DNA of 64,000 bases, taken from Isurus oxyrinchus. Lineage: Eukaryota. The position numbers and the translations under genes were made by a program. The notes beneath the pieces were generated by a model that saw only the letters and a list, made by a program, of their open reading frames with translations, did no database searches and was not told the origin of the DNA. The DNA lies in NCBI GenBank assembly GCA_026770705.1, contig JANJGN010000008.1:87110001-87174000 (forward strand). The letters are read 5' to 3'. Shown here one piece after another: positions 1 through 30,004 of this stretch (position 1 is the first letter of the stretch; each line of letters starts with the position of its first letter).

Positions 1-52
1 GTTGTAATTCCTGAAGAACAGATCACAATTGTCTATCATTGCTTTAATACAG
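1..52 (+). other. SYCE3: Probable 5' non-coding exon of SYCE3 (5' end outside window)
   Basis: Strong donor CAG|GTAAGT at 52/53, then a 64-nt intron (53-116) ending in a T-rich tract and tgtag immediately before the SYCE3 ATG at 117. Its only open frame is out of phase with the SYCE3 CDS, so it is read as UTR. Confidence 0.6.
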
Positions 53-10720: not shown

Positions 10721-12396
10721 CAGAATTTAATTGCAGTCAAAAATATACCTACACAAAAAGTCCTTCTTAGGTCAAGTAGTGAACAATCACAATTTGTAGC
10801 AAAAACTCTAGATTATGGGCAGAATTTACTGCAGCCCCCTCTTCTTGCCAGAGGCAAGTTCGGAATAGAGGGGAGGGTGTAAGGTGGGCACCCCACCATC
10901 TCCCTGCCTTCCCTTGATCAAACTTTGAGCAGGAAGGTGGAGGGCAGCCTTCCGACCCGGAGCCAATTGAGGCTCTTGAGTAGTTACTTAATGCTTTGCT
11001 GCTATTCAACCAGCAGTGGGTGGGGAACTCACCATGCAGGAAGGTGCACAGTAACCTTGTCCGCCTTCCAGGTGGGAGAACTTCTCTTTCTCATGCACAG
11101 TATGTCCGATTGGAGGACCCAGCATTGCGAAGTGGGGAGCCTGGAGGACCCAACATCAGGAAATGGAACCGTTGGAGCCCACCGCACTGTGCAAATTTCC
11201 GATCCCCTTTGCAGGCAACCCCCTCCCTGCAACCTCCATCCAACCAACACAAACCTCTATCTGGTGATCCAGCAGTGATCTTCAAGGTAAACCTGAATGT
11301 AGGAACAGCAGTGGCGACCACTCCCAATGGCGCTTCTGGTACTAGAGAGCTGCCAGCCTCTGATTGACTGACAGCTCTTGGGGATATGATTTTCACCTTA
11401 TTTGGCACTTGATTGCCTGGGAGGCCCGACGCTGTCTATGTATGTGCCTGATTGCCTCATAGTAGCCCCAGGCCTCCTGGAGCGAATCAACATGGGAGTC
11501 CTGTCTGTTCTGCAACTGGTGGGCAGGATCCCTGTTACCAACACTAAACTTCACCCAAATCTCCTCTCAACCTTGCTTTTGGTAAAGAGAATATCATGAA
11601 ATATGGGCACGTGGAGCAGTTGAAATTCTGTTTCACTTGAGTTAAATTTTAAAAAGTAGTTTGGAACTTTTTTCTCTAAAATATCACAAAATTCCTTGAA
11701 AATCACCTGCATGTTTATAATGACTAACTGCTTCAAGACTTCAAATACCTGTGTCTTCACTTTCACCTCTGCTACTGTCCACAGTGGCATCAAAACAATA
11801 TCACCTCAGTTTCCATCTCCAATATCCAGAGACCCCTTTAGAGGTATTGGTATTGGCCACATGCCAGAACTTATTACCATGTCTTTCATTGCAAAATGGT
11901 CAGGTGGATAAATCCTATCACGATCCATACCCAAGAATTTCTAGCACTGAGTCTAGCAGTTAACCAAATGACCTACCTGATCATCATTATAAGAATAGGC
12001 AGTTTGTTTTATTCTTGTGCAGTCTTGAAAACATGTTTGTTGTGTAAACAAAAACAGAAAATGCTGGAAAAACTCAGCAGGCCAAACAGCATCTGTGGAG
12101 AGAAAAAAAGAGTTAATGTTTCGAGTCTGTATGACTTCTTGTGTAGACATTAGTGTGTGGTATAAGGTTTTGAGGAGGAAGAAAAATATGTGAGAAAATT
12201 ACTCATATCTGCACAGATAGATCAGTGCTAAGGAAAAAGTGGCTTGATGGTTTTTATAATTAGGTTCAACCAAATGAAGATTGAAAACATTGCCATGAAT
12301 TGTGCAACAGTAATTATCATTAGTTAAGGAAGGTGCGTTATTAGATGAAGATTCTCTTATCTTTTTCTAATTAAATTATTTGTTAACATTTTCTAG

Positions 12397-12566
12397 TGCA
12401 AGCAACTTGTATGACCTATGACATGGTTACCCTGCGTACAGACCCCTCTGTCGTGGAATCAATGATACAATTAAATGAAGCATACCTGAATTGCAGAGAA
12501 TCAGTGGCAAAGGACTACAAAGAAATGCTAACCAAACCCAAAGAAAATGAATCAAAAACAGTTTGA
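12397..12566 (+). CDS. SYCE3: SYCE3 terminal coding exon: VQATCMTYDMVTLRTDPSVVESMIQLNEAYLNCRESVAKDYKEMLTKPKENESKTV*
   Basis: Acceptor ttttctag|TG; phase-1 join gives V. Ungapped match to recalled human VQATWMAYDMVVMRTNPTLAESMRRLEDAFVNCKEEMEKNWQELL. TGA at 12564-12566; total 90 aa; candidate polyA signal ATTAAA at 12769-12774. Confidence 0.93.
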
Positions 12567-15500
12567 TAAATAATTTTGACACTTTAAATCTTAGGTTGTA
12601 TAGTCTGTAATTTTTGATTCACCTTTGTGAATTACTCGTTCAAAGTATCCAGTCTTATTCTACTTATTGGAGCTACTCTACTTATTGGAGCTGCCAGTTG
12701 CTTTGATACTTGGGTAGCATATATCAATTTTGTGCATTGTGCCTACATTTATAATGTATTTTTATCATATTAAAAGCAAAACTTTACTAACGTTTATTTG
12801 TTTCTATATTGCTTTGAGAAAGCCATTTTAGGGCATTGGAAGTGTGTTCAAACTGTATGAATGGGACAACTTCCCAATACACTGGGACTTAAATATTACT
12901 ACCATCAGAGAGATCACTGCTTTAGTGAAAATTGATGATTGGATGTGCAAGAGGAAATCAGAAATTCTAATTTAGCATCTATTTCACACTGCCCAACTAC
13001 ATCTAGATGTCCACGAAGGAACATAAGCTTTTTTGAGGATGCTGTCTGCAGGTGCAAATTAATAAAGTACTTCTTGTGTTCTTTTCTGTTGTTTATCTTC
13101 ATACTTTTCTTAGGGGCAACTGCAATTCATGTGTGCTGGGATATAATTGACTACTGTTTCTATGCGATTCCCCCAGTACCTGAAGAGACTGTTATGATTG
13201 CCAGTTCGAGTCTCTTACTGAGGTTACTCTACCTGCTTGAGCTGGGTGTTGAGGTGGATGCCACCCACTGCATTATATTCACAGATGCGACAATTCTCTG
13301 GTTATGTCTTCTGTTGCATATACAGTTGAAGGAGAGAGTAGTAGATTCTGGATATGAACAGCACACCTGATGGCATCTATGTGAATTATAAGCCTCCTGT
13401 CAATCTGATCTGCCAGCACCTGGAAACAAGAGGAGAGAGCATGTAAAGTAATGGTGGGCCTAAGTATGTGGGGTCTCCACTGCAGAGTTACTTGGAGTTG
13501 CCACATACTCCAGGGTGCAATGCTGTGTCTTTAGCCTCCTTGTACACAAACTGCATGTGGCCTCCTCCACAATACTCTTTATCTGTTCCAGGTTGATAGC
13601 CACAGTGTTCACTGATTTTATGATACAACTGTAATCATAAAATAATCTTTTTAAAACAGTTCCTGTGAGGCCTGGATCCCTTGGCTCCCAAAATGAAGGA
13701 GGATTCAATTTTACCCTTCTGACAGTAGATTCCTGCACTAATCTGTCTCCTCGAACATCATCTGTTTACCTGTTATTTGTGAATTACCTAGCGCAGCCTC
13801 ATCACTATACTCTGGGTTGAATGCATCTGAACTGGACTTAAGTTGTTGACTGAATTATGTTGCCTGTTTTGTGTCAAGTACTTGTAAGGTCTGGCGTTGT
13901 GGCCTGCTGAGATTGCGTTTGTTATCAATCTAGATAAATTAAATGAGAAGATACAGATAGATAATAGTGATTGAATTCCACGTAAAATGAATTATATTAG
14001 AATTGGCTGGTCTTGTATTTCAGTGCTGCATTGGTGAATGAGTGATAGAGTCAGAAGCCAGTCCTCACTCACTCAACAAACTCATTCAACAGCTTCTGTA
14101 CTAAGTAGAATGAGATTTAGCTGTTCAAAACAGGAAAAGCCAGGAGTTGCATGGTCCTCTGCCTGGTCAGTGCTTATCTACCATCTTGTCGTGGAAGAAG
14201 AAGCACAGGGAAAAGTTTATATTGTAAGGAAGAAATTTAGAAATAATGTGAAGACAACAGAATAAGTGATTACGTAGATTTGTGTCATGTAACTACATTG
14301 ATGAGGATGGGAAGTAAAATGCAACTTTCCAGGAAGGTGAGTGAAGTCGTTCGTACCTAATAACAGGCATTACACAGCCCAAGTGCTCATTGGTTTTACA
14401 GCTGCTGAACTGGCTTTTTGTCAAGTTCTCATCTGTGTCAGAAAATCTATCCCATGTTTACATGTATTTCTGTATTACAAGTAGAACTATCCATGGAATG
14501 GTAAATTCATGAAAATGTCAAACAATTGCGCAGCTAATCTGAAATTGCTAATTACAAAATGTAATAAAATCATTTAATGATACAAAAGTAGACTCCAATG
14601 ATATTTTCTCCACACATCATCTAGTTTGATCCCATTCTCCCACTTGTCACATGTCCCTTAATGGGCTGTAAGTTCTGATAGAGTGCAATTGAGTTAGATT
14701 GCCACTCTGTTCAAAAGTTCCTACCTCAAAATTCAAGGGATCCTATCTTGCCTGACCTTCTGACTGAGGCTGGGTGAGATTTGGGCAATGCAGCATGTCC
14801 CTGGGGCTTAGCGTTGAGGGCTGTAGAATTGCAGGTAAGTAAGCCATGCCCCCTTTTTACGGCACCAGCTGCTGTAAACCAGGGGTTGGCTCAGGCCTTG
14901 TTGGGGGGTGAGTGGGACAGTGGGTGTCAGTTTAACTTAGGCCTTGTGGGTGGGGGTGTCAGATAGGGTCAGGCCTTGGGGGTGGGGCTGTATTGGATCC
15001 AGCCTAAGGGGTGTGGATGTCGTGTCAGACCTTGGTGGGGTGTTGGGTCAGGTCTGGCCAAGGGGGGATGGGTCTCTGGACAGGTTGGGGCTTTGGTGGG
15101 AGATAGGCTTGGGGATGAGAGTTGGGTCTGGCAGCAGCAGGAGGAGGAGAAGGAAGATCGGCAGTTGGGCCTGACAGAGGGTGGTGATTCAGGCTTGATG
15201 GGGGAGTCCCGTTGGGGGTGGGGCAAATCCCATGGGTTGTGGAGTTTCCATTAGGGAGTGTGTAGACCCTTGGGGGTGGGGGGTGTACCACGGTGTGGGG
15301 AGGTGGGTTGAGTGGAAGAATCCCATGGGGGGGGTGGTGTGGTACTCGGGGTCAGTGTGGGGCTGTACAATAGTTACCCAGAAGCTGGAATTGGTTTTAA
15401 TTCTTTCAACCTTTTCTGGGTAACTATTGGTGTAACGCAGTTGGAACCATCCGAAGTTTACGATTTAAATTGTATTTTCAGATGGTTCCCAGTGCAGGAC

Positions 15501-16114
15501 ATTTGCCCATGGGAAGTTTGCAATTACCATGTGGACATTACCTGGGAACCACTGGGGGGGTATTCCCCAGCGCATCTTTGGGGTACCCCCCCAAATACTA
15601 CGCCCTGGAGCTCAGAAGTTACAGCATACTTTCCCAGTAACTATCTCTTTAACACAAGTATTTAATATCTCTGATTAAACTGTAGCTTATGGCAAAGCAT
15701 TCCCTATTCTAACCACTTTGTCATCTTAATGACCAATGGAAACAATTCAACATTATGTTCCATAGTTTAACCCTTCATAATCTGAAGAATTTTTGTGAAG
15801 TTACCCATCAACTTTTGAGCTGCAGTGAAAAAAGTCTGTCTGCTTAACTGTAATTCCTTATCCCTGAAAACATTTCAGTTAATCTACACTGTCTTCAATG
15901 AATCTACACTCCATAGGAAAGTGAAGTTGAGACCAAAACCAGATCAGTTATGATTTTATTGAATGGCGGAGCATCGTCAAAGGGCTGCGTGACCTACTCC
16001 TACTCCTAAGCCCTATGTTTCTATGACTTGCAGTATCTTTATATCCTTCCTATAAATGGGCTACTCATAACTATCTGTAACACTCCAATTGTAACTGAAC
16101 TAAAATGTTTAGTG

Positions 16115-16640
16115 CTAGCTTGGCTGGTTGGCTAAATGTTTACCTTTGAGTCAGAAGGTTGTGAATTGAAGGATTTCAAGAAAGTGATTCAGTTCTTGAT
16201 CTAGGTTTATTCAGAGTACTGATGAATTGCTGCATTGTCAGATCTACTGTCTTTCAAAAGAGATGGTAAATTAAGATCTTGTCTGCTTAGACTTAAATTA
16301 TTCTTTCAAAGAGGAGTATGGCATTCTCCTGTTGGTTTCTTGAACATTAATGCCACCACCTGCACAGATTAATGTGTCTTTAATTTACTATTGGTAATGC
16401 TTTGTGCACAGATTGACTGCCACAATCTCCGACATAACTGTGACAATACTTCAAAGGACAATACTTCAATACTTCCCCCCTCTTCACCGTCCAAGGGCCC
16501 AAATACTCCTTTCAAGTGAAGCAGCACTTCGCTTGCACTTCCCTCAACCTTAGTTTAGTCTACTGCATTCGCTGCTCTGAAGTAATTTGGGGTGTCCCTC
16601 CTGTGAACATAAAAGGCATGATATAATTGCAAATTCTTTA
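16115..16640 (+). mobile_element. Degenerate DeuSINE (SacSINE1-like) SINE, interrupted by a short Penelope GIY-YIG fragment (~16470-16577)
   Basis: tRNA-like head (…tgagtcagaaggttgtg…), Deu-domain-like core (gcattgtcagatctactgtctttc…cagattaatg…tgtgcacagattgactgcc) and tail atataattgcaaattcttt. Recognised from recalled consensus; boundaries approximate. Confidence 0.55.
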
Positions 16641-17685
16641 TTGTGTAAGTTCAACCAAGCTTCTGCGCTTTTGTATTATAAGCCTCTGTAAAATACAAAA
16701 CCAATTCCAGTGGTCTTTAAATGGTTGTGTTTATTTCCACAAATTCATTTAATAATCTTATCCATTTAATAAAACTACCATAGTTGAATCACCCACCATT
16801 AATATGCTGGAGGTCACTATTAATCAGAAATTTAACTAGACCAGCCATATAAATGCTGTACAAGATGTTAGAATCATATCTCTCAGGACTGAGCTTTTCT
16901 TTTACAAAATGGAAGGAAATGGCTAACCTGGGATTTTTTTTTAAAGAGGTCATGTTCACCTTGAGATTGTCAACAAGGCCTCTTCCAAGAAGTCACCTAT
17001 CCTATATGGTATTTGAGAAGGAGTTGTTTGTTCCGAACTGCAACTTTAATTTATGAAAGCTGGAAGACAAAAAAGCAATTACATGGCAGAGGCAAACGCT
17101 AAGTTTAAACCTGTGGTTTTGCTTTCAGTCTTGTTGGGGAACAAGCTGAGGAAGGAAGGCTACCCTAATTGGTTCCTTCTCTCTTGCCTAAAATTGTGTG
17201 TGGCTATCAACCTGTAGCCAGAGAACCTTCATTCAGGTGTAACTAGTCTGCATTTGGACCTACAAAGCTGAGACCAGTTGGTGAGAACTTCCAGACACCC
17301 ACCAGGATTAGTGGCCCGTCTTCACATGATAAAACTCCAAGTCGACAGCGTTGAGACCTTGTGGACTTTATCCTTTATTTTATAACGCCGATCCTCCAAA
17401 GCCCATCTCTGTAGAGAAACTCGATTTGTTTGTCTGTGTGTATGTGCGTGTATGTGTGCTCGTGCACTATGGGAATTCTTTAGGAAGAGATAGATAGTTA
17501 TACTTCCCAATTACAATTATGTGTTAACCAATACTTGCAACTTGTTGAGAGAATTTTTGTTTTAAAATAAATTAATCATTCTGAGTTCTTTGAAAGAAGC
17601 CTGCTCAGAGTCTCTTCTTCTGGGCACTAGAAGTATAGGTGAACAATTGGCCATTACGGTGAGAAAATTAAACATTTAAATTAAT

Positions 17686-18750
17686 GCATGATGCCACCAC
17701 CAAACACCGCCCCCCCCCCCCCCCCCCACCCCCCATCGGCATTCCGTAGGGATCGTTCCCTCTGGGACACCCTGGTCCACTCTTCCATCACTCTGTACAC
17801 CTCAACTCCCTCCCACGGCACCTTCCCATGCAACCACAGAAGGTGCAACACTTGCCCCTTTACTTACCCCTCCTCACCATCCAAGGGCCCAAACACTCCA
17901 TTCAAGTGAAGCAGCACTTCACTTGCACTTCCCTCAATTTAGTCTACTGCATTCGCTGCTCCCAATGCAGTCTCCTCTACATTGGAGAAACCAAATGCAG
18001 ACTGGGTGACCTCTTTGCGGAACACCTTGGGTCTGTCCACAAGCATGACCCAGACCTCCTTGTCGCTTGCAATTTCAACACACCACCCAGCTCTCATTCC
18101 CACATGTCTGTCCTTGGCCTGCTGCAATGTTCCAGTGAAGCTCTATGCAAACTGGAGGAACAGCACCTCATCTCCCGACTAGGCACTCTACAGCCTTCTG
18201 GACTTAATATTGAATTCAACAACTTCAGATCATGAACTCTCTCCTCCATCCCCACCCCCTTTCTGATCCCCCTTTTTCCAATAATTTATAATTTTTAATA
18301 TATTTTTTCTTTTCCCACCTACTTCCATTATTTTTAAATGTATTTCCATCCATTGTTTTATTTCTAGCTTTTAGCCCATTTTGATCCCTTCTCCCCACCC
18401 CCCCTCCACCTCACCCCCACCCCCACTAGGGCCATCTGTCACTTGCTTGCCCTGCTTGCTACCCTTAATGTCCCCCTGAACATATTCCTTAGCTAATATC
18501 ACTACCGTCAACACCCCTTTGTCCTTATGTCTATGACATCTTTGGCAATCTCATCTTTGCCTCCACCTATCACTGGCCCTCTATCCAGCTCTACCCCCCC
18601 CCCCACCTCAACCAGCTTATATTCCACCTCATCTCTATATTTCTTAGTTCTGATGAAGAGTCATACGGACTCAAAACGTTAACAATATTCCTCTCCACAG
18701 ATGCTGTCAGACCTGCTGAGTTTTTCCAGCTATTTTTATTTTTGTTTTAT
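17686..18750 (+). mobile_element. 5'-truncated Penelope-like element (GIY-YIG + 3' tail with hammerhead at 18646-18683)
   Basis: ORF 17828-18235 is GIY-YIG (LVYCIRC…LYIGETKCRLG…GLNIEF). The 3' tail matches the arms of the 2261-5467 element. Confidence 0.88.
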
Positions 18751-18854
18751 TTAAATGAACGGCATGGCCTGTGGAATAGCGGGGCTTGATAATTTGCACA
18801 CTGCTATCCTGGTCGTAAAAAAGAGCAGTTCAAGGGCTGATTATTCTGAAACAA

Positions 18855-19415
18855 GCGACTCACCTCTTGACTCCCCAAAGCTCATCCACCATGTACAAGG
18901 CACAAGTCAGGATGAAATACCCTGCACTTGCCTGGATGAGTGCAGTTCCCAAAACACTCAAGAAGCTCAACAGCATCCAGAACAAAGCAGCCTGCTTTGA
19001 TTGGCAAACCATCCACCTTTTATATTCACTCCCTCCACCACAAGTGCAATGCGGCTGCAGTCTGCACCATCTATAAAATGCACAGCAGTAGCTAGCCAAG
19101 GCTTCTTTAGCAGCAGCTCCCAAGCCCACAACCTCTATCATCTAAAAGGACAAGGGCAACAAGCGCAGATGAACATCATCATCTTTAAGTTCCTTTCCAA
19201 GTCACACACCATTCTGATTTGGAAATAGATTGTATTCTTTCATAGTTGTTGGGTCAAAATCCTGGAACTTCCACCCTATTAGCACTATGAGAATATCTTA
19301 ACCACATTAATTGAAATAGTTCAATGTGATGGCTCACCACCACTTTCTCAAGGGCAATTAAGGATGGGCAATAAATCCTTCCTTTAGCAGCGACATCTAC
19401 ATCCTGTGAATTAAT
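18855..19415 (+). mobile_element. 3' fragment of a CR1/L2-group LINE (RT C-terminus + 3' UTR)
   Basis: ORF 18867-19076 (MYKAQVR…ALAWMSAVPKTLKKLNSIQNKAA) is typical of a non-LTR RT C-terminal region. Its 3' tail is shared with the SINEs at 44945 and 58108. Confidence 0.7.
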
Positions 19416-20874
19416 TTTAAAATGTCTATTCATCTCCACAGCTAGGTCCCAATGCTTGTATATTCAGTTTGCATTCTTACATTTAAAGTCCTTTCCAACC
19501 CACTTCCAAAACATATTACTTCACATTTCTCTACATTCAACGAAGTCTACTAACTTTCTGGCCATTCTGTTAACCTATCCAAGTCCCCCTACACACCTTT
19601 ATTGTTCTCACCACAAATGCATATTTGGCAATTCAGTTTCATCCACAAGTGTCAAAATCATTCTGACCTTTCTTTAGATTATTTCATTGATATCTGTAGT
19701 CAGTAACAATAGCTGCAACACAGATATCCGTGGCATAACATTCACAATCCTTATTAAGCATTAGGGGAGGTGGTTTCATTCCACTTTGAGTCAGTTTGGT
19801 CCTTCGCAAATGGTTTATAATCATGATCTGATTTGTGCAAGCCACTTGCAGTTTCCTATTACAGAAAATATGTGGGTAGGTGGTGGTTTGGGGCAGGGGT
19901 GGGAGGGTTGGTAATGGTGGTGGAATTCTAACTCTGAAAGGTTTGGGTCAGGTGGAGTTGTCAAAGTGTTGAAAGTTTCAGTCCTAATCTCAACCTGCCC
20001 CCAAACTGCTCATTTCCAGTTTGAATGGAGGCGTGGGTGATCAATCTTTAAAGAGGCGGGTTGGCTTAAATATTATAATATGGCTGCATGCCTCATTTGG
20101 CATGATTTGAAATTTAACTCTGGCTGGCTGGGTTCCTGAACCCCGCTCCCTCTGAAGACCGTAGAATCTTCCTATCACAAAATCCCTCTGAGCTCCTCCC
20201 ATCCCCACTGAGGCCTTTGATACCCCCAGACACTAGGATTGGCCTGCCCAGACCGTGGGCTCGCATCCACTCCCCCAGATCAAACACCCTCCTGAGGATT
20301 GGCCCCCAAAACACTGGGATCAATTCCCCCAAACATTCCTACTAGGGAATAGTCCTGTGGCCTTCAGGCTGCTGTCCAATTGACCGAAGGCCAAGTCTGT
20401 CAATCAGGTTTAATTCTGGGCAGGGAAGCTGACGGTAATGTCACATGCAATCTGTTAAAACTCCACGATGTGTGGGGGAACCTCGACATTTGGGTTTCCT
20501 GTGTTGTACTGCTCCCCCCACTAACAACTCCCATTGGGTCAGCAAAGTTAAAACTCCCCTGAAGCCTGAATGCTTTGTTAAAAAGATTCTTATTCTGAGT
20601 GGCAAGTTGAATTTTAAAAAAAAATGCAACATTAATAGTGCGAAGTTAAGCTATTGAAAATTACAGTTAACCTGAATCAGATTATTGTTACTTGGATTAT
20701 ATGATTTCCAGTCTGGCTCACAGATGTTTAGTTAAGAATTTGATAATCTCCCTTCTATCATGTTTATAACATTCATGATTTCACTCCTCTCAAATTTACA
20801 AGCTTGATGGCCATTCATCAAAATGATTGGACCCTATGTTTTGGGTAATTTTTTGTATTTATTTGTTGAATTAG

Positions 20875-20983
20875 GTACACAAGGAACCAGTGAGTAATTT
20901 TTGCATGGCTGAGCAGCAGGAAATACTTGAGGAAATGATTAACTATTTGGGCACAATGTTAGAAGATATGGACCAACTATATG
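20875..20983 (+). CDS. SYCE3-like paralogue, coding exon A: (VHKEPVSNFC)MAEQQEILEEMINYLGTMLEDMDQLY + 1 nt
   Basis: Acceptor tttgttgaattag| and donor TATG|gtaaca; 109 nt, open throughout, phase-1 end like SYCE3. ATG at 20905. The hydrophobic heptad register matches SYCE3 (L..M...L..ML.DM..L). Confidence 0.72.
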
Positions 20984-22017
20984 GTAACAATGATTATATT
21001 TAACAGACAAAATGAATTATTAAATTAAATTTAAGGTACCAACTTAAATTGGATATCAAAATGTAATGGACTCAACTGATAGATTCTCATTTTAATAGAT
21101 TTTCTAGGCTTTGTTTTTTTCTCTTTTTCTATCAATGTCCACCTTTCCCTCCACCCATCCTCAAGCTGTTGATTGCAATCAGCCATATGATTGCTAGACA
21201 CCAGTTGTCTTACATTTTCTATTTTAAGTCACCACTATTCTTAAGAATATAAGATTTAGGAATAGGAGTATGTGATATGACCCTATGAGCCTGCTACACC
21301 ATTCAGTAAGATCTTAGCTGATCTTCTACCTTAACTCCATCTTCCTGCACAATCCCAGATTCCCTTAGAACCAACACATTTCTCAGTCGCTGAGCATTCA
21401 CAGCTTTTTGGAATAGAGAATTTCAAAGATTCACATCCCTTTGGGTGGAGAAATTTCTCCTCATCTCAGTCCTAATTAGATAACACCCTAACACTGTGAT
21501 CCTCTAGTTCTAGATTCCCCTGACAAGGGAAACATCCTCCCAGCGTTTATCCTGTCAAACCCTTAAGAACACAGAACATTTTTAACAAGAGGCTGCAGTT
21601 GTCTAAGGAACCTATGTTTATACATCTTGTTTTTATGAGGGTTAAGGTGTCCTGTGGCCGGTGTAAGCTGAGTTTGTTTAAAAGCATTAGCGAAGCCATT
21701 GGCAAAAGCCATAGGCTGTTCATTATGTGCTTGTGTCATTTGGGAACAGACAGCCATTAGGTTCATGCTTAGGAGATTCAAGACCTCTGAGTGGGTTGTC
21801 ATACAGTGTTCCAAGCTGCATAACTTGCAGATCAATGGCACCTTTCAGGCTCTTTTCAGTGCCTATCTACGGGATCTTTATTAGATCATTTTCTTGAAGC
21901 TCTATATGAAATAATTTTCCAGTTTTCGATTTAGTATTGATGTTTAATGGGTTATCATCATACATAATAGGGCTAAATTCTCTTGCCATTGTCTGTGCTG
22001 GCTCTGATCTGATCCTG

Positions 22018-23867
22018 AAAGCAATATATTGTGGATGCTGGAAGTCTGAAATAAAAACAGAAAATGCTGGAAAAACTTAGCAGGTCTGGCAGCATCTGTG
22101 GAGAGAGAAACAATTAATGTTTTGAGTCTATATGACTTCTTCAGAGCTAAAGAGACATAGAAATGTGATGGATTTTATACTGTTTAAGAGGGGTTGGAGC
22201 AGGTGAAGCAAGATAGAAGGTTAGCAATAGGTGTGAGCTAAGGAGAGATTGACAAAGATATCATGGACACAAGACAAAGGGAGTGTTAATGGTAGTGGTA
22301 AGGACTAAATAAGGTGCTGATACTGGCAGAATGTGTTAATAGCAGAGCAAGAGTGAGCGCTCTGTGAAAGCGCAACATAGAGACAAGTGACAGATGACAT
22401 TGGGGAGTGGCACATTGGGGGAAAAAGGATTATAAATAAGTAAGCAAGATTAAAAATAAAATTTAAAAATAAAAAAATCGATTAAAAAAGTAGAGATAGG
22501 GGAGAGTGTTCATGGTTTGAAGTTGTTGAACTCAATGTTAAGCCTAGAAGGCTGCAAAGTGCCTAATCAGAAGATGAGGTGCTGTTCCTCCAGTTTGCGT
22601 TGAATTCACTGGAACATTGCAGCAGAACAAGGATGGACATGTGGACATGAGAGCAGGCTGGTGTGTTAAAATGGCAAGCGACAGGAAGGTCTGGGTCATG
22701 CTTGCAAACTGAGCGAAGGTGTTCCACAAAGTGTTCACCTAGTCTGCATTTAGTCTCCCCAATGTAGAGGAGACCACATTGGGAGCAGCGAATACAGTAG
22801 ACCAAATTAAAGGAGGTGCAAGTGAAGCACTGCTTCGCCTGAAAGGAGTGTTTGGGGCCTTGGATGATGAGGAGGGAGGAGGTAAAGGGGCAGGTGTTGC
22901 ACCTTATGCGATTGCATGGGAAGGGAATGAGGAGCTGGGGGGGTGACAGAGGAGTGGACCAGGCTGTTAAGGAGGGAAGGGTCCTTATGGAATGCTGACT
23001 GGGGGGAGGTGCTGGTGAGGGGAAGATGTGTTTGGTGCTAGCTTTATGCTGAAGTTTGTAGGAATGACGGAGGATGATCCATTGAACGCGGAGGCTGGTG
23101 GGGTGAAAACTGAGGACAAGGGGGACTCTCTATCATGATTCTGGAAGGGAGGCAAAGGGCTGTGGGCACAGGTGTGGGAAATGGGTCAGACGTGGTTGAG
23201 GGCCCTGTTAACCACAGTGATTGGGAACCCTCGGTTAAGGTAAAAGGAAGACATGTCAGAAGCGCCGTTTAGGAAGGTGACATCATCTAAACAGATGCGA
23301 CAGAGGCGGAGGAACTGAGAGAATGGGATGGAGTCTTTACAGGAAGCAGGATGTGAGGATTTTCATTACAAGCCCACAGACTTCCACAGCCACCTTGGGT
23401 ACGGTTCCTCACACCCTGCTCAACCGTGCCCAACCCATCTTCCGCACCTCTGCCCTCACCTCTTCCCTCCCTGGTCCATATTTTAAAAAATCTTTTTTCC
23501 CCAACAACCCATCCCCACTCCCCCCAGCCCTATCTTTCACTTGTTTCTGTGTTGTGTTTTCACAGAGCACTCACCCTTGTTCTGCTATTAACACATTCTG
23601 CCACTATCAACACCTTCTTTAGTCCTTACCACTACCATTAACACTCCCTTTTTCTTGTTTCTATGACATCTTTATCAATCTCTCCTTAGCTCCCTATCCC
23701 TGACCTTCTATCTTCCTTCATTGGCTCCACCCACCTTCAACAGTATAAAATCCATTACATCTCTACCCTTTATCTCTGAAAAAGAGTCAAACGGACTCGA
23801 AACGTTAACTCTGTTTCTCCCTCCACACATGCTGCCAGACCTGCTGAATTTTTCCTGAATTTTCTGT
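22018..23867. mobile_element. Penelope-like element, inverted insertion (minus arm 22018-~23359, internally deleted plus arm ~23360-23867)
   Basis: GIY-YIG ORF remnant at 22563-22805(-). Both ends carry the PLE tail in opposite orientation. 15-bp TSD TCTGATCTGATCCTG (22003-22017) / TCTGATCTGATCTTG (23868-23882). Confidence 0.85.
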
Positions 23868-24061
23868 TCTGATCTGATCTTGTTGGACAATCACTTGATC
23901 AGGCGATCCTGCAGCTCCCCTTGGTGGTCATTTCTTAAACAAAAATTGTGACCCTGCCTCCCAACCCCCCAGCTCCTTTTTTAAATCCACCGCTGTATCC
24001 TTTCTCAAAGCTCTGTAATCAGGAATTTTGAGCTGCTATTACTGCCCTTCCTGAGCCATAC

Positions 24062-26280
24062 GAACATACAAAATAGGAGCAGAACTAAGCCATTCGGCCC
24101 CTCGAACCTGCTCTGACATTCTATTAGGTCATGGCTGATCTGTTTGTTTTTGAATTCCACATTCCCATCTGCCCCTGATAACCTTTGATTCCCTTGCCTA
24201 ACAAGAATCTATCTACCTCCGCCTTTGAAATATTCAATGACCCCCCCTCCACCGCTTTCTGAGGCAGAGTTCCAAAGTCGCAAAATCATCTGAGAGAAAA
24301 AAATTCTCCTAATCTCAGTACTTAAAGGGTGACCCCTAATTTTAAAACTGTGCCACCTAGTTCTAGACTTACCCAGAAGAGGAAACATCCTTTCCACATC
24401 CACCTTCTCGAGACCATTCAGGATCTAATATACTTCAATCAAGTTACCCATCACTCTTCTAAACAAGCCCAGTCTGTCCAACCTTTACTCATAAGACAAG
24501 CCATTCCTTCCAAGTATCAATCTAGTGAACCTCTCTGAACCGCTTCCAACATATTTATATCCTTCCTTAAAGAAGGAGACCAAAACTGCACACAGTATTG
24601 AGATGTAGTCTCACCAATGCCCTGTATAACTAAAGCACAACATCCTTACTTTAATAAAAGCAAAATACTGTGGATGCTGGAAATCTGAAAGACAGAAAAT
24701 GCTGGAGAAACTCAGCAGGTCTAGTAGCATCTGTGGCGAGAGAAACAGGGTTAAAGTTTCGAGTCCATATAACCCTTTTTCAAATCCTTACTTTTATGTT
24801 CAATTCCTCTCAAAATAAAGGATAGCATTTCATTACCCTTATTAATTACTTGCTGTACCTGCATACTAACTTTTTGTGACTCATGCACACCTAGAACACC
24901 TACATCACTTTACACCTTGGAATTCTGCAGTCATTCTCCATTTAAGTAATACTCTGCTTTTTTAATTCTTCTTGCCAAAGTGAACAACTTCACATTATCC
25001 TTCATCTCAAAATTTTTGCCCACTCACTTAACCTATCTATATCTGTCTGCATCCTCCTTATGCCCTCTTCACAACATACTTTCCTACCTATCCTTGTGTT
25101 ATCTGCAAATTTAGCCACCATGCCTTCACTCCCCTCATCTAAGTAATTGATGTAAATTGTAAAAAGTTGAGGCCCCAGCATCGAGCACTGCTGGACTCCA
25201 CTTGTCACATTTTGCCAATCAGAAAAAGACACATTTATGCATTCTCTCTGTTTTCTACCAGTCAATCAATCTTCTATCCAAGCTAATATGTTACCCCCTG
25301 CATCATGAGCTTTTATTTTCCGCAATAACCTTTGATGTGGCACCTTAGCAAATGTCCTCTGGAACTCCTAGTACAGTGCGTCATAAGGCTCCCCTTTATC
25401 CACTGCACATCTTACTCCTTCGAAGAAATCCAAAAAATTGTTTAAACATGATTTCCCTTTCACAAAACCATATTGACTCTTCCCGATTACCTTAGGTTTT
25501 CCTAAGTGCCCAGCTATAACCTCCTTAATGATCAATTCTAACACCTTCCCCACAACAGACATCAAGATAACTGGCCTGTGCTTTCCTGTTTTCTGCTGCC
25601 CTCCTTTGTTGAATAAAGGGGTAATATTTGCTAGTTTGTAGTCTGATGGAACCTTTCCAGAATCTAGCGAATTTTGGAAAATTAACACCAACTACTATCT
25701 CATTAGCCACCCCCATTAAGACCCTAGGATTAAGTCTATCAGGTTCCTGAGAGTTGTCAGCCCGCAGCTCCATCATTTTGCTTGGTATTGCTTCCCTAGT
25801 GATTGTAATTTCACCAAGTTCCTCTCTCCCTTCCACCTCCTGATTTACAGCTATTACTGGAATATTTTTTGTATGTTCTGTATCATATTTCAGTACTTTC
25901 AAGTGTATATCTGTGCCCTCAGCTCATCTACCTTATTCACTAGCATTCTTGCATTGAAGCATGTAGCATCAATCACTGCACAACATTTTTGTTTTATACT
26001 CTTTGTTTTCACAATCTTCCAAACTTGCTAATTAATTTTCTGCCTTTGATTTCTAGCTTTGTTTCTTCGTCCCTCTGAATCTACGCTCAGGTTCCTTCCT
26101 CCCTGCCAAAATAGTTATAAGTTTCCTCTACAACACAAGCAACCTCCATGATATTGGCCCCAATCCTGCTAAGGTGTACCCCATTCAGCTTGTAAAGGTT
26201 CCACCTCTCCCAATGCCCCCAGAATCTGAAACCCTCTCTCCTGCACCATCTCTCCTGCCATACATTCAGCTGCACTATCC
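24062..26280 (-). mobile_element. Degenerate CR1-clade LINE (RT and 3' UTR, ORF1 esterase-like remnant)
   Basis: ORF remnants IFQNSLDSGKVPSD…ANITPLF, QYGFVKGKSCLNN, VTSGV.Q.SMLGPQLFTIYIN, KFADNT and WCRREGFRFWGHW. Boundaries approximate. Confidence 0.85.
24656..24783 (-). mobile_element. ~128-bp Penelope 3'-tail insertion inside the CR1 LINE
   Basis: PLE tail sequence whose 5' end falls in a degenerate hammerhead core. 14-bp TSD ATCCTTACTTTAAT (24642-24655) / ATCCTTACTTTTAT (24784-24797). Confidence 0.75.
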
Positions 26281-26801
26281 TATTATTTTTATACTCAAGA
26301 TCTTTTGCCCTACTTTTTCATTTCTTTCCTGGTTCCTTCCTTTGGCAGATTTGGTGTGTCATCCCACCCATTGTCTCAGATTGGTCAGGAAATTTGGAAG
26401 TGGAATGCTAATGCCATGGCTGAGCTAAAGAGCCATTACAAAGCTTGCTGACAGTTTAAGCAGCATAAGGGTCCACTAAGATAAAATTCTACCTTATGAA
26501 GCAAATCAGTTTAATGTGTGACTTGGAGGTGATAATGTTCCCACGATTTGTTGCTCATGTTCTTGGTGGAGAGTTCATGAGCCTGTAGCTGCTATTGGAG
26601 TATGTTTAGTGACTTGCTGCAACACATCCTGTGCAGACTACAATGGGTGATTAAGAAATGCCTCTGAATTGTATTTCCTTTGTTGTAGTTTTGGTCAGCA
26701 ACAGCATTTCTTTGGTAATGTAGGTTTCCTACCCTCAAATCACATTATTAGCAGTAAAGATTGTTTAATAAGTGTTTCTTTCGCTAACTGAAAAAACTTA
26801 A

Positions 26802-26929
26802 GGCCGGGATTTTCTGACCCCACCATGGTGGGACCTGCCGCAGGGGGATGCAGCAGGCCAGCCAAAAGTCCACTGACTTTGGCAGGACCGGAAGACCCAG
26901 GTGGTGGGCACGGCTGTAAAATCCCAGCC
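26802..26929. mobile_element. Short Harbinger-type MITE
   Basis: Terminal inverted repeats GGCCGGGATTTT…AAAATCCCAGCC, the same TIR family as 50669-51361. Confidence 0.6.
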
Positions 26930-27569
26930 AACTTTCACGCTTTGCTGTTCTTATTAATTATCTTTTATAAGAAAGATAGGAAAGAGAAATAATATCCTTT
27001 TGGGATCAACATAGACTTGGACATTAGGTTCTTAAAATATTTGCATTCAAAATGTTAATTTTTTTGTCTACTATAAATAACTTAGCATTTCCATTCAATT
27101 AGATCATATTCAATAACTGTAATTTTCAGGGTAATGTGAAACAAAGAGTTAACTGAGGTTCTGTTGGCTGTTCTTATTCTGTAGCATGGCCCAGTCAACA
27201 CTATTCCAGTGCCATTACATGACGGACATACTTCTGTGACACCCGATGTCAAAGGATGACCTTAAATTTACACTAGTCAGTCACAATTGAATATGTGTTA
27301 CACTAAATACATTTTCAATTAAATCTCAAAAATAAAACAGACACTCAGACAAATAATACATTTTTTATTGTTATTGAAATTTAGAGTTTCTAGAATTCTG
27401 CTGAAAGTATTCAAAAGAGTAATAGTAAAAATCATAACTACTAGCACAAATAGCCATTGATATTTTTCATAATCAGAACTAATAAATAAAACTTTGTGGT
27501 AGAGTATTGAAACTGGTAGCAATTTCCTGCCCAATGCTTAGTCTTTTTGATATGATTTTTGCATTTTAG

Positions 27570-27691
27570 TGCAGACACAGCTTCTCCTGTGCGACATGAC
27601 TATATGCTTCAACTCTCCAGCAAAGATGGAGGCAGTCAAACATGGTGAAGAGAGGTACAAGCATCACAGAGAAATATCAGACCACCAATAG
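27570..27691 (+). CDS. SYCE3-like paralogue, terminal exon: VQTQLLLCDMTICFNSPAKMEAVKHGEERYKHHREISDHQ*
   Basis: Acceptor tttttgcattttag|TGCAG mirrors SYCE3 ctag|TGCAA. Ungapped alignment keeps VQ, DM, the loop Pro and the E/EE/Y positions. TAG at 27689-27691; AATAAA at 27851-27856. Confidence 0.72.
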
Positions 27692-27967
27692 CATTAAAGA
27701 AGTAAAAAGAAAATATCTTACACACCCCAAATTTTGATATAAACAACATTAAACAATGATTGATTTTCATGGTGTTGGGAATCTTGTGAAAATATTTGTC
27801 TTCTGTTTGCTCTTTCTGCTGTAATGTTATCTGTTCATGTGACATTCGGGAATAAAAGTGACACATATTTTACTTTAAGTGTTTTTGTTATTGTCCTGTG
27901 TTCACATGCTAATGCCCTTAAGAACAGTATAGTAAGAGTAAAACATAAGAAAGTTTTGAAGAAATCA

Positions 27968-29185
27968 TATCAATGATTTGGATGAGGGAACTAAATGTGA
28001 TATTTCCAAAGATAAAGATAAAATACTGTGGATGCTGGAAATCTGAAACAAAAACAAAAAATGCCGGAAAAACACATCAGGTCTGACAGCATCTGTGGTG
28101 AGAAAGACAGAATTAATGTTTCGAGTCCGTATGACTCTTCTTCAGAGCTCTGAAGAGGAGTCAGCTCTGAGGAAGAGTCATACGGACTCAAAACGTTAAC
28201 TCTGTCTTTCCCTCCACAGATGCTATCAAACCTGCTGAGTTTTTCCAGCACTTTTTGTGTGTAATATTTCCAAGTTTGCTGACCCAACACGAAACTTGGT
28301 GGGAATGTGAGTGGTGAGGAGAGTGTTAAGAGGCTTTGAAACGATTTAGACAATTTGAATGAATGGGAAAATACATAGCAGATGCAGTATTACATGGATA
28401 AGTGTGAAGTTATCCACTTTGATAAGAAAAACAGAATGGCAGGGTATTATTTAAATGGTGATAGATTGGGAAATGTTAATGTACAAAAGGACCTGGGTGT
28501 CCTTGTACACCAGTCACTGAAAGCAAGCATCCAGGTGCAGCAAGCAGTTAAGAAGGCAAATGGTATGTTGGCCTTCATTGCCAGAGGACTTGAGTACAGG
28601 AGCAAGGATGTCTTACTGCAGCTGTACGTGGCCTTGGTGAGACCACACCTGAAGTATTGTATGCAGTGTTGGTCTCCTTACCTAAGAAAGGATATACTTG
28701 CTATAGAGGGAGTGCATCAAAGGTTCACCAGACTGATTTCTGGGATGGAAGGATTCTTGTATGAGGAGAGATTGGGTCGACTAGGCCTATATTCGCTGGA
28801 GTTTAGAAGAATGAGAGGGGATCTCTCTGACAGGGCTGGACAGACTGGATGCAGGGATGATATTTCTTCTGGTTGGGGGGTCTAGAACAAGTGTTGCAGT
28901 CTCAGGATATGGAGTAGGCCATTCAGGGCAGAGATGAGGAGAAACTTCTTCACTCAGAGGGTGGTGAACCTGTGCAATTCTCTACCATAGAGGACTATGG
29001 AGGCCAAGTCATTGAATATATTTAAGAAGGAACTAGATAGATTTCTAGACTCTAAAGGCATCAAGGGGTATGGGGAGAGAGCGGGAGTATGGCATTGAGA
29101 TAGGGGATCAGCCATGATCATACTGAATGGTGGAGCAGGCTCAAAGGGCTGAATGACCTACTGCTCCTATTTCCTATGTTTCTAT
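27968..29185 (+). mobile_element. 5'-truncated CR1-clade LINE (RT C-terminus + 3' UTR)
   Basis: ORF 28382-28885 (KCEVIHF…KDLGVLV…KANGMLAFI…LVRPHLKYC…LEFRRMRGDL) and a typical tail ending cctatgtttcta. Confidence 0.88.
28010..28259. mobile_element. 250-bp palindromic mini-Penelope made of two divergent hammerhead-containing tails, inserted in the CR1
   Basis: Minus tail ~28018-28149 and plus tail ~28164-28259. 14-bp TSD TGTGATATTTCCAA (27996-28009) / TGTAATATTTCCAA (28260-28273). The CR1 RT sequence (ISKFAD) resumes across it. Confidence 0.82.
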
Positions 29186-29909
29186 ATTCAAATTGAAATG
29201 TTAATTCTGTTTCTGTCTCCACAGACGCTGCCAGACCTGCTGAGTATTTCCAGCATTTTCTGTTTTTATTTCAGATTTCCAGCATCTACAGTATTTGCTT
29301 TTAAAACAAAATCAATTTGTTGAAAACAATGCATGAACAAGTCAGGCAGTATCATTGGAGAGCGCAGATGGGTTGAGATTTCAGCTCTGAGCTCTTTGTC
29401 AAGATTGGAGGGTATTGCAGATGAACAACACTCAGAAAGGAACATAACAACAATAAGGTACAGAAAGAACACACAAGGGAATAATTAGAATGACCCAATA
29501 AAATGCTTAATTGGAAAATGAGCTGTTTAAATAGCAGAAATGATATTAAAATTAGACAATAGTGAGGCATAATAAGAATAACCAAGAAACTCAAGACAGT
29601 TACAAAACACAGGGAACATGTGAATTGCTGAAGCATGCAAGGGATGAGATCAGTGACGAATTTACAGTTAATGGGGCCCTGTCCTCAGGTTCACTTTCGG
29701 AGTCCTCCCACCCCACCAGGACTCCCGCCCCACTTCTGGAAACAAGCCAAAACTATGGGGCATTGGTTATTTCACTGGCTTTTTCACAGTCACATAACTA
29801 CTTCTGCACACTATCACATAAACTTAGTTATCGCCACTTAATCGAAAAAACTTAGTGCCTCTAATGAGATGATACAACTTAAAGCATGTATGCAATTGAG
29901 TGCTCCTTT

Positions 29910-30004
29910 GCTCTCGTGATGCAATCGGTTAGCACGTGATACATTAATGGCAGGATTGAAGCATGTGCCAAGGTTGTGCTTTCAAGCCAAACTTCTGTTC
30001 AGCA
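29910..30004 (+). pseudogene. Degenerate tRNA-Ile(UAU)-like pseudogene with intron-length spacer
   Basis: gctctcgtgatgcaatcggttagcacgtgatacattaa…tgccaaggttgtgctttcaagcc aligns with recalled vertebrate tRNA-Ile-TAT (GCTCCAGTGGCGCAATCGGTTAGCGCGCGGTACTTATA-intron-ATGCCGAGGTTGTGAGTTCGATCC). The anticodon and acceptor stem have decayed. Confidence 0.6.

What the first reader, a model, noticed from the sequence alone, without database searches (positions are those of the whole stretch)
20875..27856. Diverged tandem paralogue of the meiotic synaptonemal-complex gene SYCE3
Seen: 8.3 kb downstream of the intact SYCE3 stop, on the same strand, two exons (20875-20983, 27570-27691) have canonical splice sites. 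They share the phase-1 intron inside the V of 'VQ', have no stops or frameshifts, and are followed by AATAAA. The spliced product is (VHKEPVSNFC)MAEQQEILEEMINYLGTMLEDMDQLY|VQTQLLLCDMTICFNSPAKMEAVKHGEERYKHHREISDHQ*. It aligns without gaps to SYCE3 and keeps the heptad hydrophobics, D45-M46 and the inter-helix P53 (human numbering from memory). It replaces both W41 and Y44 (with L and C) and ends 16 residues earlier than the neighbouring copy. Established: SYCE3 is normally a single-copy helix-loop-helix protein, and W41/Y44 drive its higher-order self-assembly. Inference: an open frame despite heavy divergence suggests purifying selection. The paralogue could dimerise but not polymerise, for example as a chain terminator or a sex-specific or stage-specific central-element subunit. 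The ORF track misses it entirely.
Basis: partly seen in the sequence, partly recalled or inferred. Interest (0 to 1): 0.82.

Follow-up and report, generated by a model that had tools for sequence, protein, structure and literature searches.

The report
Diverged duplicate SYCE3 exon cassette
Downstream of this shark's meiotic gene SYCE3 lies an old, strongly diverged copy of its two coding exons; catshark annotation records the same copy as an alternative ending of the SYCE3 gene, so one gene probably makes two very different small helical proteins.

Summary
Both exons (20875-20983 and 27570-27691), their splice sites, the shared phase-1 intron, the open frame and AATAAA (27851-27856) are there.

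The likeness to SYCE3 is too weak for ordinary searches: Pfam finds nothing and tblastn gives E 8.9. It is still not chance. When every AG and GT in the window was scored in register against a shark SYCE3 profile, the two exons ranked 2nd of 8847 and 3rd of 6748, just behind the true exons. In-register DNA identity is 44-47% against a 25-26% background.

The decisive result is an exhaustive protein search, which found orthologues in two catsharks with 79-82% identity from the MAE start (76-79% over all 76 cassette codons). RefSeq calls them "SYCE3 isoform X2/X3". They lie in the same gene model as canonical SYCE3 and carry its 5' leader. The copy is therefore most likely an alternative terminal two-exon cassette of SYCE3, not a separate gene.

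- Canonical shark SYCE3 already has Cys at human W41.
- The loop proline is Leu in one catshark.
- Helix 2 keeps only 3-4 of 10 conserved hydrophobic positions.

No RNA run of this species was available, so expression here is untested. No paper on it was found.

The parts
1..52 (+). 3' end of the upstream (leader) exon of SYCE3, with donor cag|gtaagt at 52/53. It corresponds in position and phase 0 to the catshark leader MAYSQDTAIIRPQ. Here it reads ...KNRSQLSIIALIQ with an in-frame stop and no ATG.
   Evidence: catshark leader in P0017 and P0019
117..219 (+). Canonical SYCE3 first coding exon (MAEGIPC...EMLS plus G of the split Val codon). Its 3' end, read in another frame (199-219, MNWRCCQ), matches the N-terminus of catshark isoform X3.
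   Evidence: (79% to Heptranchias SYCE3)
12397..12566 (+). Canonical SYCE3 last coding exon with its stop. The first poly(A) signal, ATTAAA, is at 12769.
   Evidence: Pfam PF15191 E 5.1e-12; 84-85% to shark SYCE3
20875..20983 (+). Cassette exon A': diverged duplicate of the first coding exon. Phase-0 acceptor, ATG at 20905, phase-1 donor.
   Evidence: tblastn of the catshark isoforms E 2e-16
27570..27691 (+). Cassette exon B': diverged duplicate of the last coding exon. Phase-1 acceptor, 39 codons plus TAG.
   Evidence: (80% identity to P0015, E 4.6e-13)
27692..27875 (+). Presumed 3' UTR of the cassette, with ATTAAA at 27693 and 27748 and AATAAA at 27851-27856.
   Evidence: the end of the transcript was not measured

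Best explanation
The two exons are an ancient, strongly diverged tandem duplicate of the two coding exons of SYCE3. They most likely work as a second, alternative terminal cassette of the SYCE3 transcription unit, not as an independent gene. Transcription starts at the SYCE3 promoter. The leader exon (donor at 52, phase 0) can splice to the canonical pair (117-219, then 12397-12566 with its own poly(A) signal). If the canonical pair is skipped and its poly(A) site read through, the leader can instead splice to the downstream pair (20875-20983, then 27570-27691 with its own stop and poly(A) signals). In this species the second route would give a 66-residue protein starting at ATG 20905. It is predicted to be helix-break-helix like SYCE3. 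The end of helix 1 and the loop region are well conserved (VQTQ-LLCDMTICFNS), but helix 2 is short and polar and has lost most of the SYCE3 hydrophobic seam. Shown here: the exons, their phases and signals; non-chance homology to SYCE3; orthologues with kept frame in two catsharks; and that those orthologues are filed in the SYCE3 gene model with shared 5' sequence. Inferred: that the catshark models rest on RNA-seq; that the same splicing occurs in this shark; that the protein is made in meiocytes; and that it modulates central-element assembly rather than building it, because its helix 2 and its lateral-assembly positions differ.
For: Sequence anatomy. Non-chance homology: splice-anchored ranks 2/8847 and 3/6748. 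In-register nucleotide identity is 44% and 47% against 25-26% background. Codon position 2 (36/66) is more conserved than position 3 (23/66), and there are no indels over 66 codons. BLASTP of last exon against last exon is in register at E 0.005. hhalign is ungapped over 51 columns across the exon junction, E 0.005. The three nearest ESM-Atlas clusters are all PF15191 SYCE3 (0.86-0.87, 184-186 shared features). Orthologues: P0015 at 80% over all 40 residues, E 4.6e-13. The catshark proteins are XP_072369057 (S. torazame X2) and XP_038651254/55 (S. canicula X2/X3), with accession numbers consecutive to isoform X1 and on the same chromosome. Shared transcription unit: P0017 starts with the same 13 residues as canonical X1. 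The P0018/P0015 N-terminus equals the out-of-frame 3' end of the canonical coding exon, also present in the window at 199-219. The phases are compatible in the window. No CpG island lies in the first 30 kb of the window, including the stretch between the canonical exon and the cassette. Constraint: window versus catshark identity is 52-54/66 for the cassette and 78/90 for canonical SYCE3. Fold: helix 15-57, break at S-P, helix 60-83 in P0018, against helix 22-61, break, helix 64-93 in canonical SYCE3.
Against: No RNA evidence for this species. Every run that holds the stretch is genomic DNA, with contigs covering intron and exon alike. Their RNA support is therefore inferred from how NCBI's pipeline builds alternative isoforms. 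The S. torazame model may also lean on the S. canicula protein. The X3-type transcript (canonical exon joined to the cassette) puts the canonical ATG first and runs into a stop after 41 codons in the window, so part of this splicing may be unproductive. Pfam PF15191 does not recognise the product. Against a relative about 1.6% diverged, the cassette's last exon shows 2 nonsynonymous and 0 synonymous differences, at the same rate as intron and UTR. Between the two catsharks the cassette changes about four times faster than canonical SYCE3 (6/68 versus 2/90). Constraint is therefore weaker and could be relaxed in this lineage. No dN/dS could be computed.
Confidence: 0.68

Rival explanations
1. 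It is an independent tandem paralogous gene. It has its own promoter and untranslated first exon upstream of 20875 and makes a separate SYCE3-like protein. On this view the catshark 'isoforms' are read-through or merged gene models.
For: Exon A' has an acceptor, so some upstream exon is needed, and it could lie in the 8.3 kb spacer. The cassette has its own ATG, stop and poly(A) signals. Automatic pipelines often merge adjacent same-strand paralogues.
Against: Both kinds of catshark model carry SYCE3 5' sequence, either the leader or the canonical coding exon. The frame in the window is open from the acceptor exactly as needed for the phase-0 leader splice. No CpG island or other promoter sign lies in the spacer, which is full of transposon fragments. 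This is weak evidence, because testis promoters often lack CpG islands.
Confidence: 0.15
2. It is a relic. The duplicated exons were once functional and are now drifting. They are spliced into SYCE3 read-through transcripts as noise, and the open frame in three species is a leftover in slowly evolving shark genomes.
For: In the last exon, 2 nonsynonymous and 0 synonymous differences to a close relative, at the intronic rate. Both are derived in the window lineage, because the relative carries the S. canicula residues. The cassette evolves faster than canonical SYCE3. The loop Pro is lost in S. torazame. The stop lies two codons earlier in the window than in catsharks. Helix 2's hydrophobic seam is lost. 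The X3-type transcript is unproductive from its first AUG.
Against: No stop, frameshift or splice-site loss in any of three species over 66-78 codons. No indel relative to canonical SYCE3 despite near-saturated DNA divergence. Cassette identity between the window and the catsharks (79-82%) is close to that of the certainly constrained canonical protein (87%). The central block LLCDMTICFNS is invariant.
Confidence: 0.14
3. It is a chance resemblance: two unrelated open stretches with splice-like edges that happen to look like SYCE3.
For: Ordinary searches do not see it. tblastn of a real shark SYCE3 on the window gives E 8.9 for exon B' and nothing for exon A'. BLASTP of the first exons finds nothing. 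Pfam finds nothing.
Against: Extreme ranks in the anchored scan for both exons, on the same strand, in the right order, with matching phases and split Val codon. Conserved orthologues sit inside the SYCE3 gene model of two other species. The nearest Atlas clusters are SYCE3.
Confidence: 0.01

Closest known systems
SYCE3 (synaptonemal complex central element protein 3; Pfam PF15191; structures 6H86 and 4R3Q as cited in PMC7614228 and PMC6556580)
   Same: Same locus and strand. Same two-coding-exon layout, with the phase-1 intron in the Val of 'VQ'. Similar size. Predicted helix-break-helix with the break at the same aligned place. The D-M pair after the junction and most helix-1 hydrophobic positions are kept.
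   Different: Only about 24% identity (16/66 in the window). Not recognised by the Pfam profile. The start is 8 residues shorter and the end 16 residues shorter. The lateral self-assembly positions (human W41/Y44) are L or F, and C. Helix 2 is polar, keeping 3-4 of 10 conserved hydrophobic positions. The loop proline is not fixed. It evolves faster.
RefSeq models 'SYCE3 isoform X2/X3' of Scyliorhinus canicula (XP_038651254.1, XP_038651255.1) and 'isoform X2' of S. torazame (XP_072369057.1)
   Same: Orthologues of the window cassette. Exon A' is 25-27/36 identical and exon B' 33/40, with the same junctions and the same MAE start inside exon A'.
   Different: The catshark models start further upstream, at the leader MAYSQDTAIIRPQ or the out-of-frame MSWRCCQ, and end two residues later (…DQQQY). 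In the window the leader has no ATG and the first codon of exon A' is GTA rather than ATG, so the product would start at MAEQQ.
Alternative terminal or mutually exclusive exon cassettes that arose by tandem exon duplication (a general, well-known class)
   Same: A duplicated exon set within one transcription unit, with compatible splice phases, each cassette having its own stop and poly(A) signal. The choice would be made by splicing against polyadenylation.
   Different: The whole coding region is duplicated, not one domain, so the two products share at most a short leader. The copies have diverged to the edge of recognisability.
SYCE3 copy on the germline-restricted chromosome of nightingales (PMC10172847)
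   Same: It shows that SYCE3 is not single-copy in every vertebrate.
   Different: That copy lies on an extra chromosome in songbirds. It is not a tandem cassette in the same gene, and nothing suggests comparable divergence.

Membership tests
SYCE3 family (Pfam PF15191 Synaptonemal_3) | Match to the family profile at or above the curated score (27 bits) | tested here: not met
   No PF15191 hit at E up to 10 for window exon A' or B', nor for the full-length catshark orthologues P0015, P0017 and P0018. Controls: the canonical last exon scores 46 bits and P0005 scores 65.5 bits. PDB sequence search finds no SYCE3 chain.
SYCE3 family (Pfam PF15191 Synaptonemal_3) | Descent from SYCE3: same gene structure (phase-1 intron in the Val of VQ), adjacency and in-register similarity | tested here: met
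   The orthologues lie in the SYCE3 gene model of two catsharks. The three nearest Atlas clusters are SYCE3 (a lead only).
SYCE3 family (Pfam PF15191 Synaptonemal_3) | Helix-loop-helix chain with the turn at the conserved proline (human P53) | tested here: inconclusive
   AF2 monomer models place the break at S-P (58-59) in P0018 and at T-D before the Pro in canonical P0002. The alignment is shallow, helix 2 has pLDDT 63-74, and the Pro is Leu in S. torazame. Fold searches gave only generic long helices.
SYCE3 family (Pfam PF15191 Synaptonemal_3) | Surface aromatic pair W41/Y44 that drives lateral self-assembly (PMC6556580, PMC7614228) | tested here: not met
   The cassette has L (F in catsharks) and C at these positions. 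Caveat: canonical elasmobranch SYCE3 has an invariant Cys at 41 and keeps Tyr at 44 in 12 of 13 sequences (His in Pristis). W41 is therefore not a defining feature in this clade.
SYCE3 family (Pfam PF15191 Synaptonemal_3) | Hydrophobic seams of both helices that build the dimeric four-helix bundle | tested here: not met
   Helix 1 keeps 12 of 17 conserved hydrophobic positions. Helix 2 keeps only 3-4 of 10.
SYCE3 family (Pfam PF15191 Synaptonemal_3) | Dimerisation, binding to SYCP1 and other central-element proteins, and meiotic expression | not testable with these tools
   No RNA run of this species holds the stretch. No multimer prediction or biochemistry is available.
Alternative terminal exon cassette of one gene (tandem exon duplication) | A shared upstream exon spliced to either cassette | tested here: met
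   Met in the catsharks. P0017 carries the canonical leader, and P0018 and P0015 carry the 3' end of the canonical coding exon in another frame. For the window only the compatibility is shown: phase 0 at 52, 117 and 20875.
Alternative terminal exon cassette of one gene (tandem exon duplication) | Each cassette has its own stop codon and poly(A) signal | tested here: met
   Canonical: stop at 12564-12566 and ATTAAA at 12769. Cassette: stop at 27689-27691 and AATAAA at 27851.
Alternative terminal exon cassette of one gene (tandem exon duplication) | Spliced transcripts of both forms seen in RNA of this species | not testable with these tools
   The one run search found only DNA holders. Laid contigs cover intron and exon equally.

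The most novel reading that the evidence does not exclude
Sharks make, from the SYCE3 promoter, a second and very different SYCE3-derived helix-loop-helix protein by choosing a duplicated terminal cassette. This isoform keeps a SYCE3-like helix 1 but lacks the lateral-assembly surface and the helix-2 seam. It acts as a natural regulator of synaptonemal-complex central-element growth, for example as a cap or competitor, perhaps in a sex- or stage-specific way through the choice between splicing and polyadenylation.
Probability: 0.15. Interest if true: 0.75.

Novelty: new variant of a known kind. Interest (0 to 1): 0.5.

Why it matters
SYCE3 is the adapter that remodels the SYCP1 lattice and seeds the central element. 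Its function in mouse depends on a few surface and loop residues (PMC6556580, PMC7614228). A naturally retained sister protein, co-transcribed from the same gene and differing at exactly those features, would be a ready-made separation-of-function variant for testing models of SC assembly. It would also be a clear case of a whole coding region duplicated inside one gene and kept as an alternative ending. The practical point for annotation is that the product is invisible to Pfam and BLAST. It is labelled 'SYCE3 isoform' in RefSeq only because of its position. If the cassette proves to be splicing noise, the finding reduces to an old decaying duplicate.

Tried and rejected
- **Pfam on each exon and on the catshark orthologues:** no SYCE3 hit.
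- **Word-index protein search with exon B' (40 aa):** nothing. This is explained afterwards: the orthologues are 85-91 aa, outside the 22-70 aa length band.
- **tblastn of true SYCE3 on the window:** the cassette is lost among chance hits. BLASTP of the first exons found nothing.
- **DNA alignment of flanks:** no similarity outside the coding parts.
- **RNA evidence:** the single run search returned only DNA holders, plus small 'RNA?' runs that hold none of the words. Laying contigs on 26500-27999 showed genomic coverage, no joints and no loose end at 27570. The 6.6-kb intron cannot fit the 6,000-letter limit, so a direct joint could not have been seen anyway.
- **The look-up of encoding contigs:** I therefore have no catshark DNA, no dN/dS and no view of the catshark exon map.
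- **Fold searches:** Foldseek on PDB gave nothing. VIA wide gave only generic long coiled coils at Z about 6. These are uninformative for a two-helix protein.
- **PDB sequence search:** nothing relevant.
- **Rfam on 12-30 kb:** nothing at gathering score.
- **Earlier-findings look-ups:** nothing on SYCE3.
- **Rejected readings:** chance resemblance, and a fresh pseudogene (no disabling change in three species).
- **Joined model:** I sent no joined (spliced) window peptide to any search or fold tool. Full-length natural orthologues stood in for it. Scripts joined exon references twice, never for a search or a fold: once to read frames across junctions and once to count hydrophobic positions.
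Full report
**What is in the sequence**

The claimed exons are exactly as described. Exon A' (20875-20983) follows a pyrimidine-rich acceptor (…ttgaattag|) and ends at …ctatatg|gtaaca. Its frame reads VHKEPVSNFC-MAEQQEILEEMINYLGTMLEDMDQLY, with the ATG at 20905. Exon B' (27570-27691) follows …gcattttag| and reads QTQLLLCDMTICFNSPAKMEAVKHGEERYKHHREISDHQ*. The split codon is G|TG (Val). Poly(A) signals follow: ATTAAA at 27693 and 27748, and AATAAA at 27851.

The upstream gene is a true SYCE3:
- a leader exon ending at 52 (cag|gtaagt);
- a coding exon at 117-219 (MAEGIPC…EMLS);
- a last exon at 12397-12566, which hits Pfam PF15191 at E 5e-12 and is 84-85% identical to whale-shark and sevengill-shark SYCE3.

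The distance from the canonical stop to exon A' is 8309 bases.

**Is the likeness to SYCE3 more than chance?**

Ordinary searches say no:
- Pfam finds nothing in either cassette exon.
- BLASTP of the first exons finds nothing.
- BLASTP of the last exons gives 8/27 identities, E 0.005 for the single comparison, though exactly in register from the splice site.
- tblastn of a real shark SYCE3 on the window puts exon B' at E 8.9, among more than a dozen chance hits.

I therefore asked a sharper question. I built a profile from 13 elasmobranch SYCE3 proteins (alignment A3). I then scored every AG in the window (both strands, 8847 sites) as if it were the phase-1 acceptor of the last exon. I scored every GT (6748 sites) as if it were the phase-1 donor of the first coding exon.

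Exon B' ranks second, right after the true exon (z 4.8). Exon A' ranks third (z 3.8). The result holds for other lengths. The two lie on the same strand, in the right order, 6.6 kb apart. Both are stop-free and both carry the bases needed for the split Val codon.

In-register nucleotide identity is 54/122 and 37/79, against a background of 25-26% (p about 2e-4 each). The flanking intron sequence is at background. Second codon positions (36/66 identical) are better kept than third positions (23/66). No indel has accumulated in 66 codons despite near-saturated divergence. Profile-profile alignment is ungapped over 51 columns across the exon junction (E 0.005, probability only 7-15%). I conclude that this is real but very old homology, with the frame kept for most of its history.

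**Relatives elsewhere**

The word-index search with exon B' found nothing, because its length band (22-70 aa) excludes the real relatives.

The exhaustive HMMER search of 1.84 billion representatives found one clear hit. P0015 is 85 aa and 80% identical over all 40 residues (E 4.6e-13). A second hit, a 972-aa repeat protein, has no aligned stretch and I disregard it.

The P0015 cluster holds three RefSeq proteins:
- XP_072369057.1, 'SYCE3 isoform X2' of Scyliorhinus torazame;
- XP_038651254.1, isoform X2 of S. canicula;
- XP_038651255.1, isoform X3 of S. canicula.

Their accession numbers run on from the canonical isoform X1 (XP_072369056.1 and XP_038651253.1), and they lie on the same chromosome. 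tblastn of these proteins on the window hits exactly exon A' (from the acceptor) and exon B' (E 1e-15 to 1e-20).

**One gene or two?**

The N-termini of the catshark models answer this.
- Isoform X2 of S. canicula (P0017) begins MAYSQDTAIIRPQ. These are the same 13 residues that begin canonical isoform X1. It then continues MHKEPMNNLCMAEHQK…, so the leader exon is spliced straight to exon A'.
- The other models (P0018, P0015) begin MSWRCCQ or MSWRYCQ. In the window, MNWRCCQ is the last 21 bases of the canonical coding exon (199-219) read in another frame. These models therefore join the canonical coding exon to exon A'.

Both types tie the cassette to the 5' part of SYCE3. The window is compatible with this. 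The leader donor (52), the canonical acceptor (117) and the cassette acceptor (20875) are all phase 0. That explains why the frame is open for ten codons upstream of the ATG in exon A'.

In this species the visible part of the leader has no ATG and carries an in-frame stop. The product would therefore start at MAEQQ (66 aa), just as the canonical protein would start at MAEGIPC.

The X3-type transcript puts the canonical ATG first and runs into a stop after 41 codons (…EMLSGTQGTSE*). That form is probably unproductive for the cassette protein.

No CpG island lies anywhere in the first 30 kb. The spacer and the cassette intron carry transposon fragments.

That the isoforms rest on RNA-seq is my inference from how NCBI's pipeline makes alternative variants. 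No known protein could have seeded them.

**Constraint**

| Comparison | Cassette (from MAE) | Canonical SYCE3 |
|---|---|---|
| Window versus catsharks | 52-54/66 identical (79-82%) | 78/90 (87%) |
| S. canicula versus S. torazame | 62/68 | 88/90 |

The window-versus-catshark difference is not significant (Fisher p 0.2-0.5). Between the two catsharks the cassette changes about four times faster than canonical SYCE3. The block VQTQ-LLCDMTICFNS is almost invariant.

The only runs that hold the stretch are genomic DNA of a relative about 1.6% diverged, with contigs running through intron and exon alike. In exon B' they differ at 27581 (L to F) and 27665 (H to Y). Both changes are nonsynonymous, and the rate equals that of the intron (17/1070) and the UTR (5/308). 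Both variant residues equal the S. canicula state, so the window lineage carries two derived replacements.

Together this shows long-term frame and sequence retention, but weaker constraint than on SYCE3, possibly relaxed recently. dN/dS could not be computed.

**What the protein looks like**

AlphaFold2 models, built on shallow alignments, give the following:

| Protein | Helix 1 | Break | Helix 2 | Mean pLDDT | Helix 2 pLDDT |
|---|---|---|---|---|---|
| Catshark cassette protein (P0018) | 15-57 | 58-59 (S-P) | 60-83 | 74.7 | 63-74 |
| Canonical SYCE3 (P0002) | 22-61 | 62-63 | 64-93 | 81.0 | 81-93 |

The break falls at the same aligned place in both. Of the positions that are hydrophobic in at least 90% of canonical shark sequences, the cassette keeps 12 of 17 in helix 1 but only 3-4 of 10 in helix 2. 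The loop proline is Leu in S. torazame.

Fold searches returned only generic long helices. PDB sequence search found nothing. The ESM-Atlas feature search placed three SYCE3 (PF15191) clusters as the three nearest of 7.7 million (0.86-0.87, 184-186 shared features). By the tool's own rules this is a lead, but it is independent of position.

The literature facts are right. W41 and Y44 mediate lateral self-assembly, W41E/Y44E leaves a dimer, P53Q opens the loop, and Syce3 WY/WY mice are infertile (PMC6556580, PMC7614228).

However, all 13 canonical elasmobranch SYCE3 sequences have Cys at the W41 position, and 12 of them keep Tyr at 44 (His in Pristis). The contrast between 'assembly-competent neighbour' and 'assembly-dead paralogue' therefore rests on Y44 alone. 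The polar helix 2 also makes even SYCE3-like dimerisation doubtful. A cap or modulator role remains possible but is untested.

SYCE3 is also not single-copy everywhere. A copy sits on the nightingale germline-restricted chromosome (PMC10172847).

**Novelty**

The cassette protein is already in RefSeq for two catsharks, labelled as SYCE3 isoforms by position. I found no paper that combines SYCE3 with catsharks, or with sharks in general, in the searchable library (also 32).

What is new is the recognition that these 'isoforms' use a diverged duplicate of the whole coding region. That makes the locus one SYCE3 gene with two alternative protein bodies.

**Limits and rules followed**

- The spliced window peptide was never joined for a search or fold. 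Exons were searched by reference, and natural full-length orthologues stood in for the joined product.
- Scripts joined exon references twice: once to read frames across junctions and once to count hydrophobic positions in register.
- Read laying was given 1,500 letters.
- The window has no N.
- No step needed referral.

Noticed in passing
window 1-52 and 117-119: The conserved elasmobranch SYCE3 leader (MAYxQDxAxIRPQ in sharks and rays) is degenerate here: ...KNRSQLSIIALIQ, with AAG in place of the ATG and an in-frame TAA at 5-7. In this species canonical SYCE3 probably starts at the MAE codon at 117. Mustelus, Hemiscyllium and Chiloscyllium models also have different leaders.
   Followed up: partly
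alignment A3 (13 elasmobranch SYCE3 proteins); window 12406-12408: All canonical elasmobranch SYCE3 sequences have Cys where human SYCE3 has W41, one half of the lateral self-assembly pair. Tyr 44 is kept in 12 of 13 (His in Pristis). Shark SYCE3 may therefore assemble through a somewhat different surface than the mammalian protein.
   Followed up: partly
window 28010-28259: Another first-stage note (s1-869058) calls this a palindrome of two hammerhead ribozymes. An Rfam scan of 12000-30000 at gathering scores found no family there. I did not try the permissive threshold.
   Followed up: partly
window 2794-4910, 17688-18235, 22563-22805, 25368-25691 (-), 38204-38527: Transposon fragments surround and interrupt the locus. 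There are repeated ORFs with a GIY-YIG-like motif (Pfam E 8e-4, below cut-off), typical of Penelope-like elements. A reverse-transcriptase fragment lies inside the cassette intron (RVT_1, E 2e-5). A Harbinger-type DDE_Tnp_4 transposase fragment lies downstream (E 7e-16).
   Followed up: partly
window 26800-26900 and 27950-27999: Very high contig depth in the DNA runs, in the hundreds to 40,000 against about 5 elsewhere. This marks short high-copy repeats just upstream of exon B' and just before the palindrome at 28010.
   Followed up: no
window 117-219 joined to 12397 or to 27570 (phases only): The donor of the canonical coding exon (phase 1) is also frame-compatible with the acceptor of cassette exon B' (phase 1). 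A hybrid of canonical helix-1 start and cassette end is therefore possible in principle. No model or read for it was seen.
   Followed up: no
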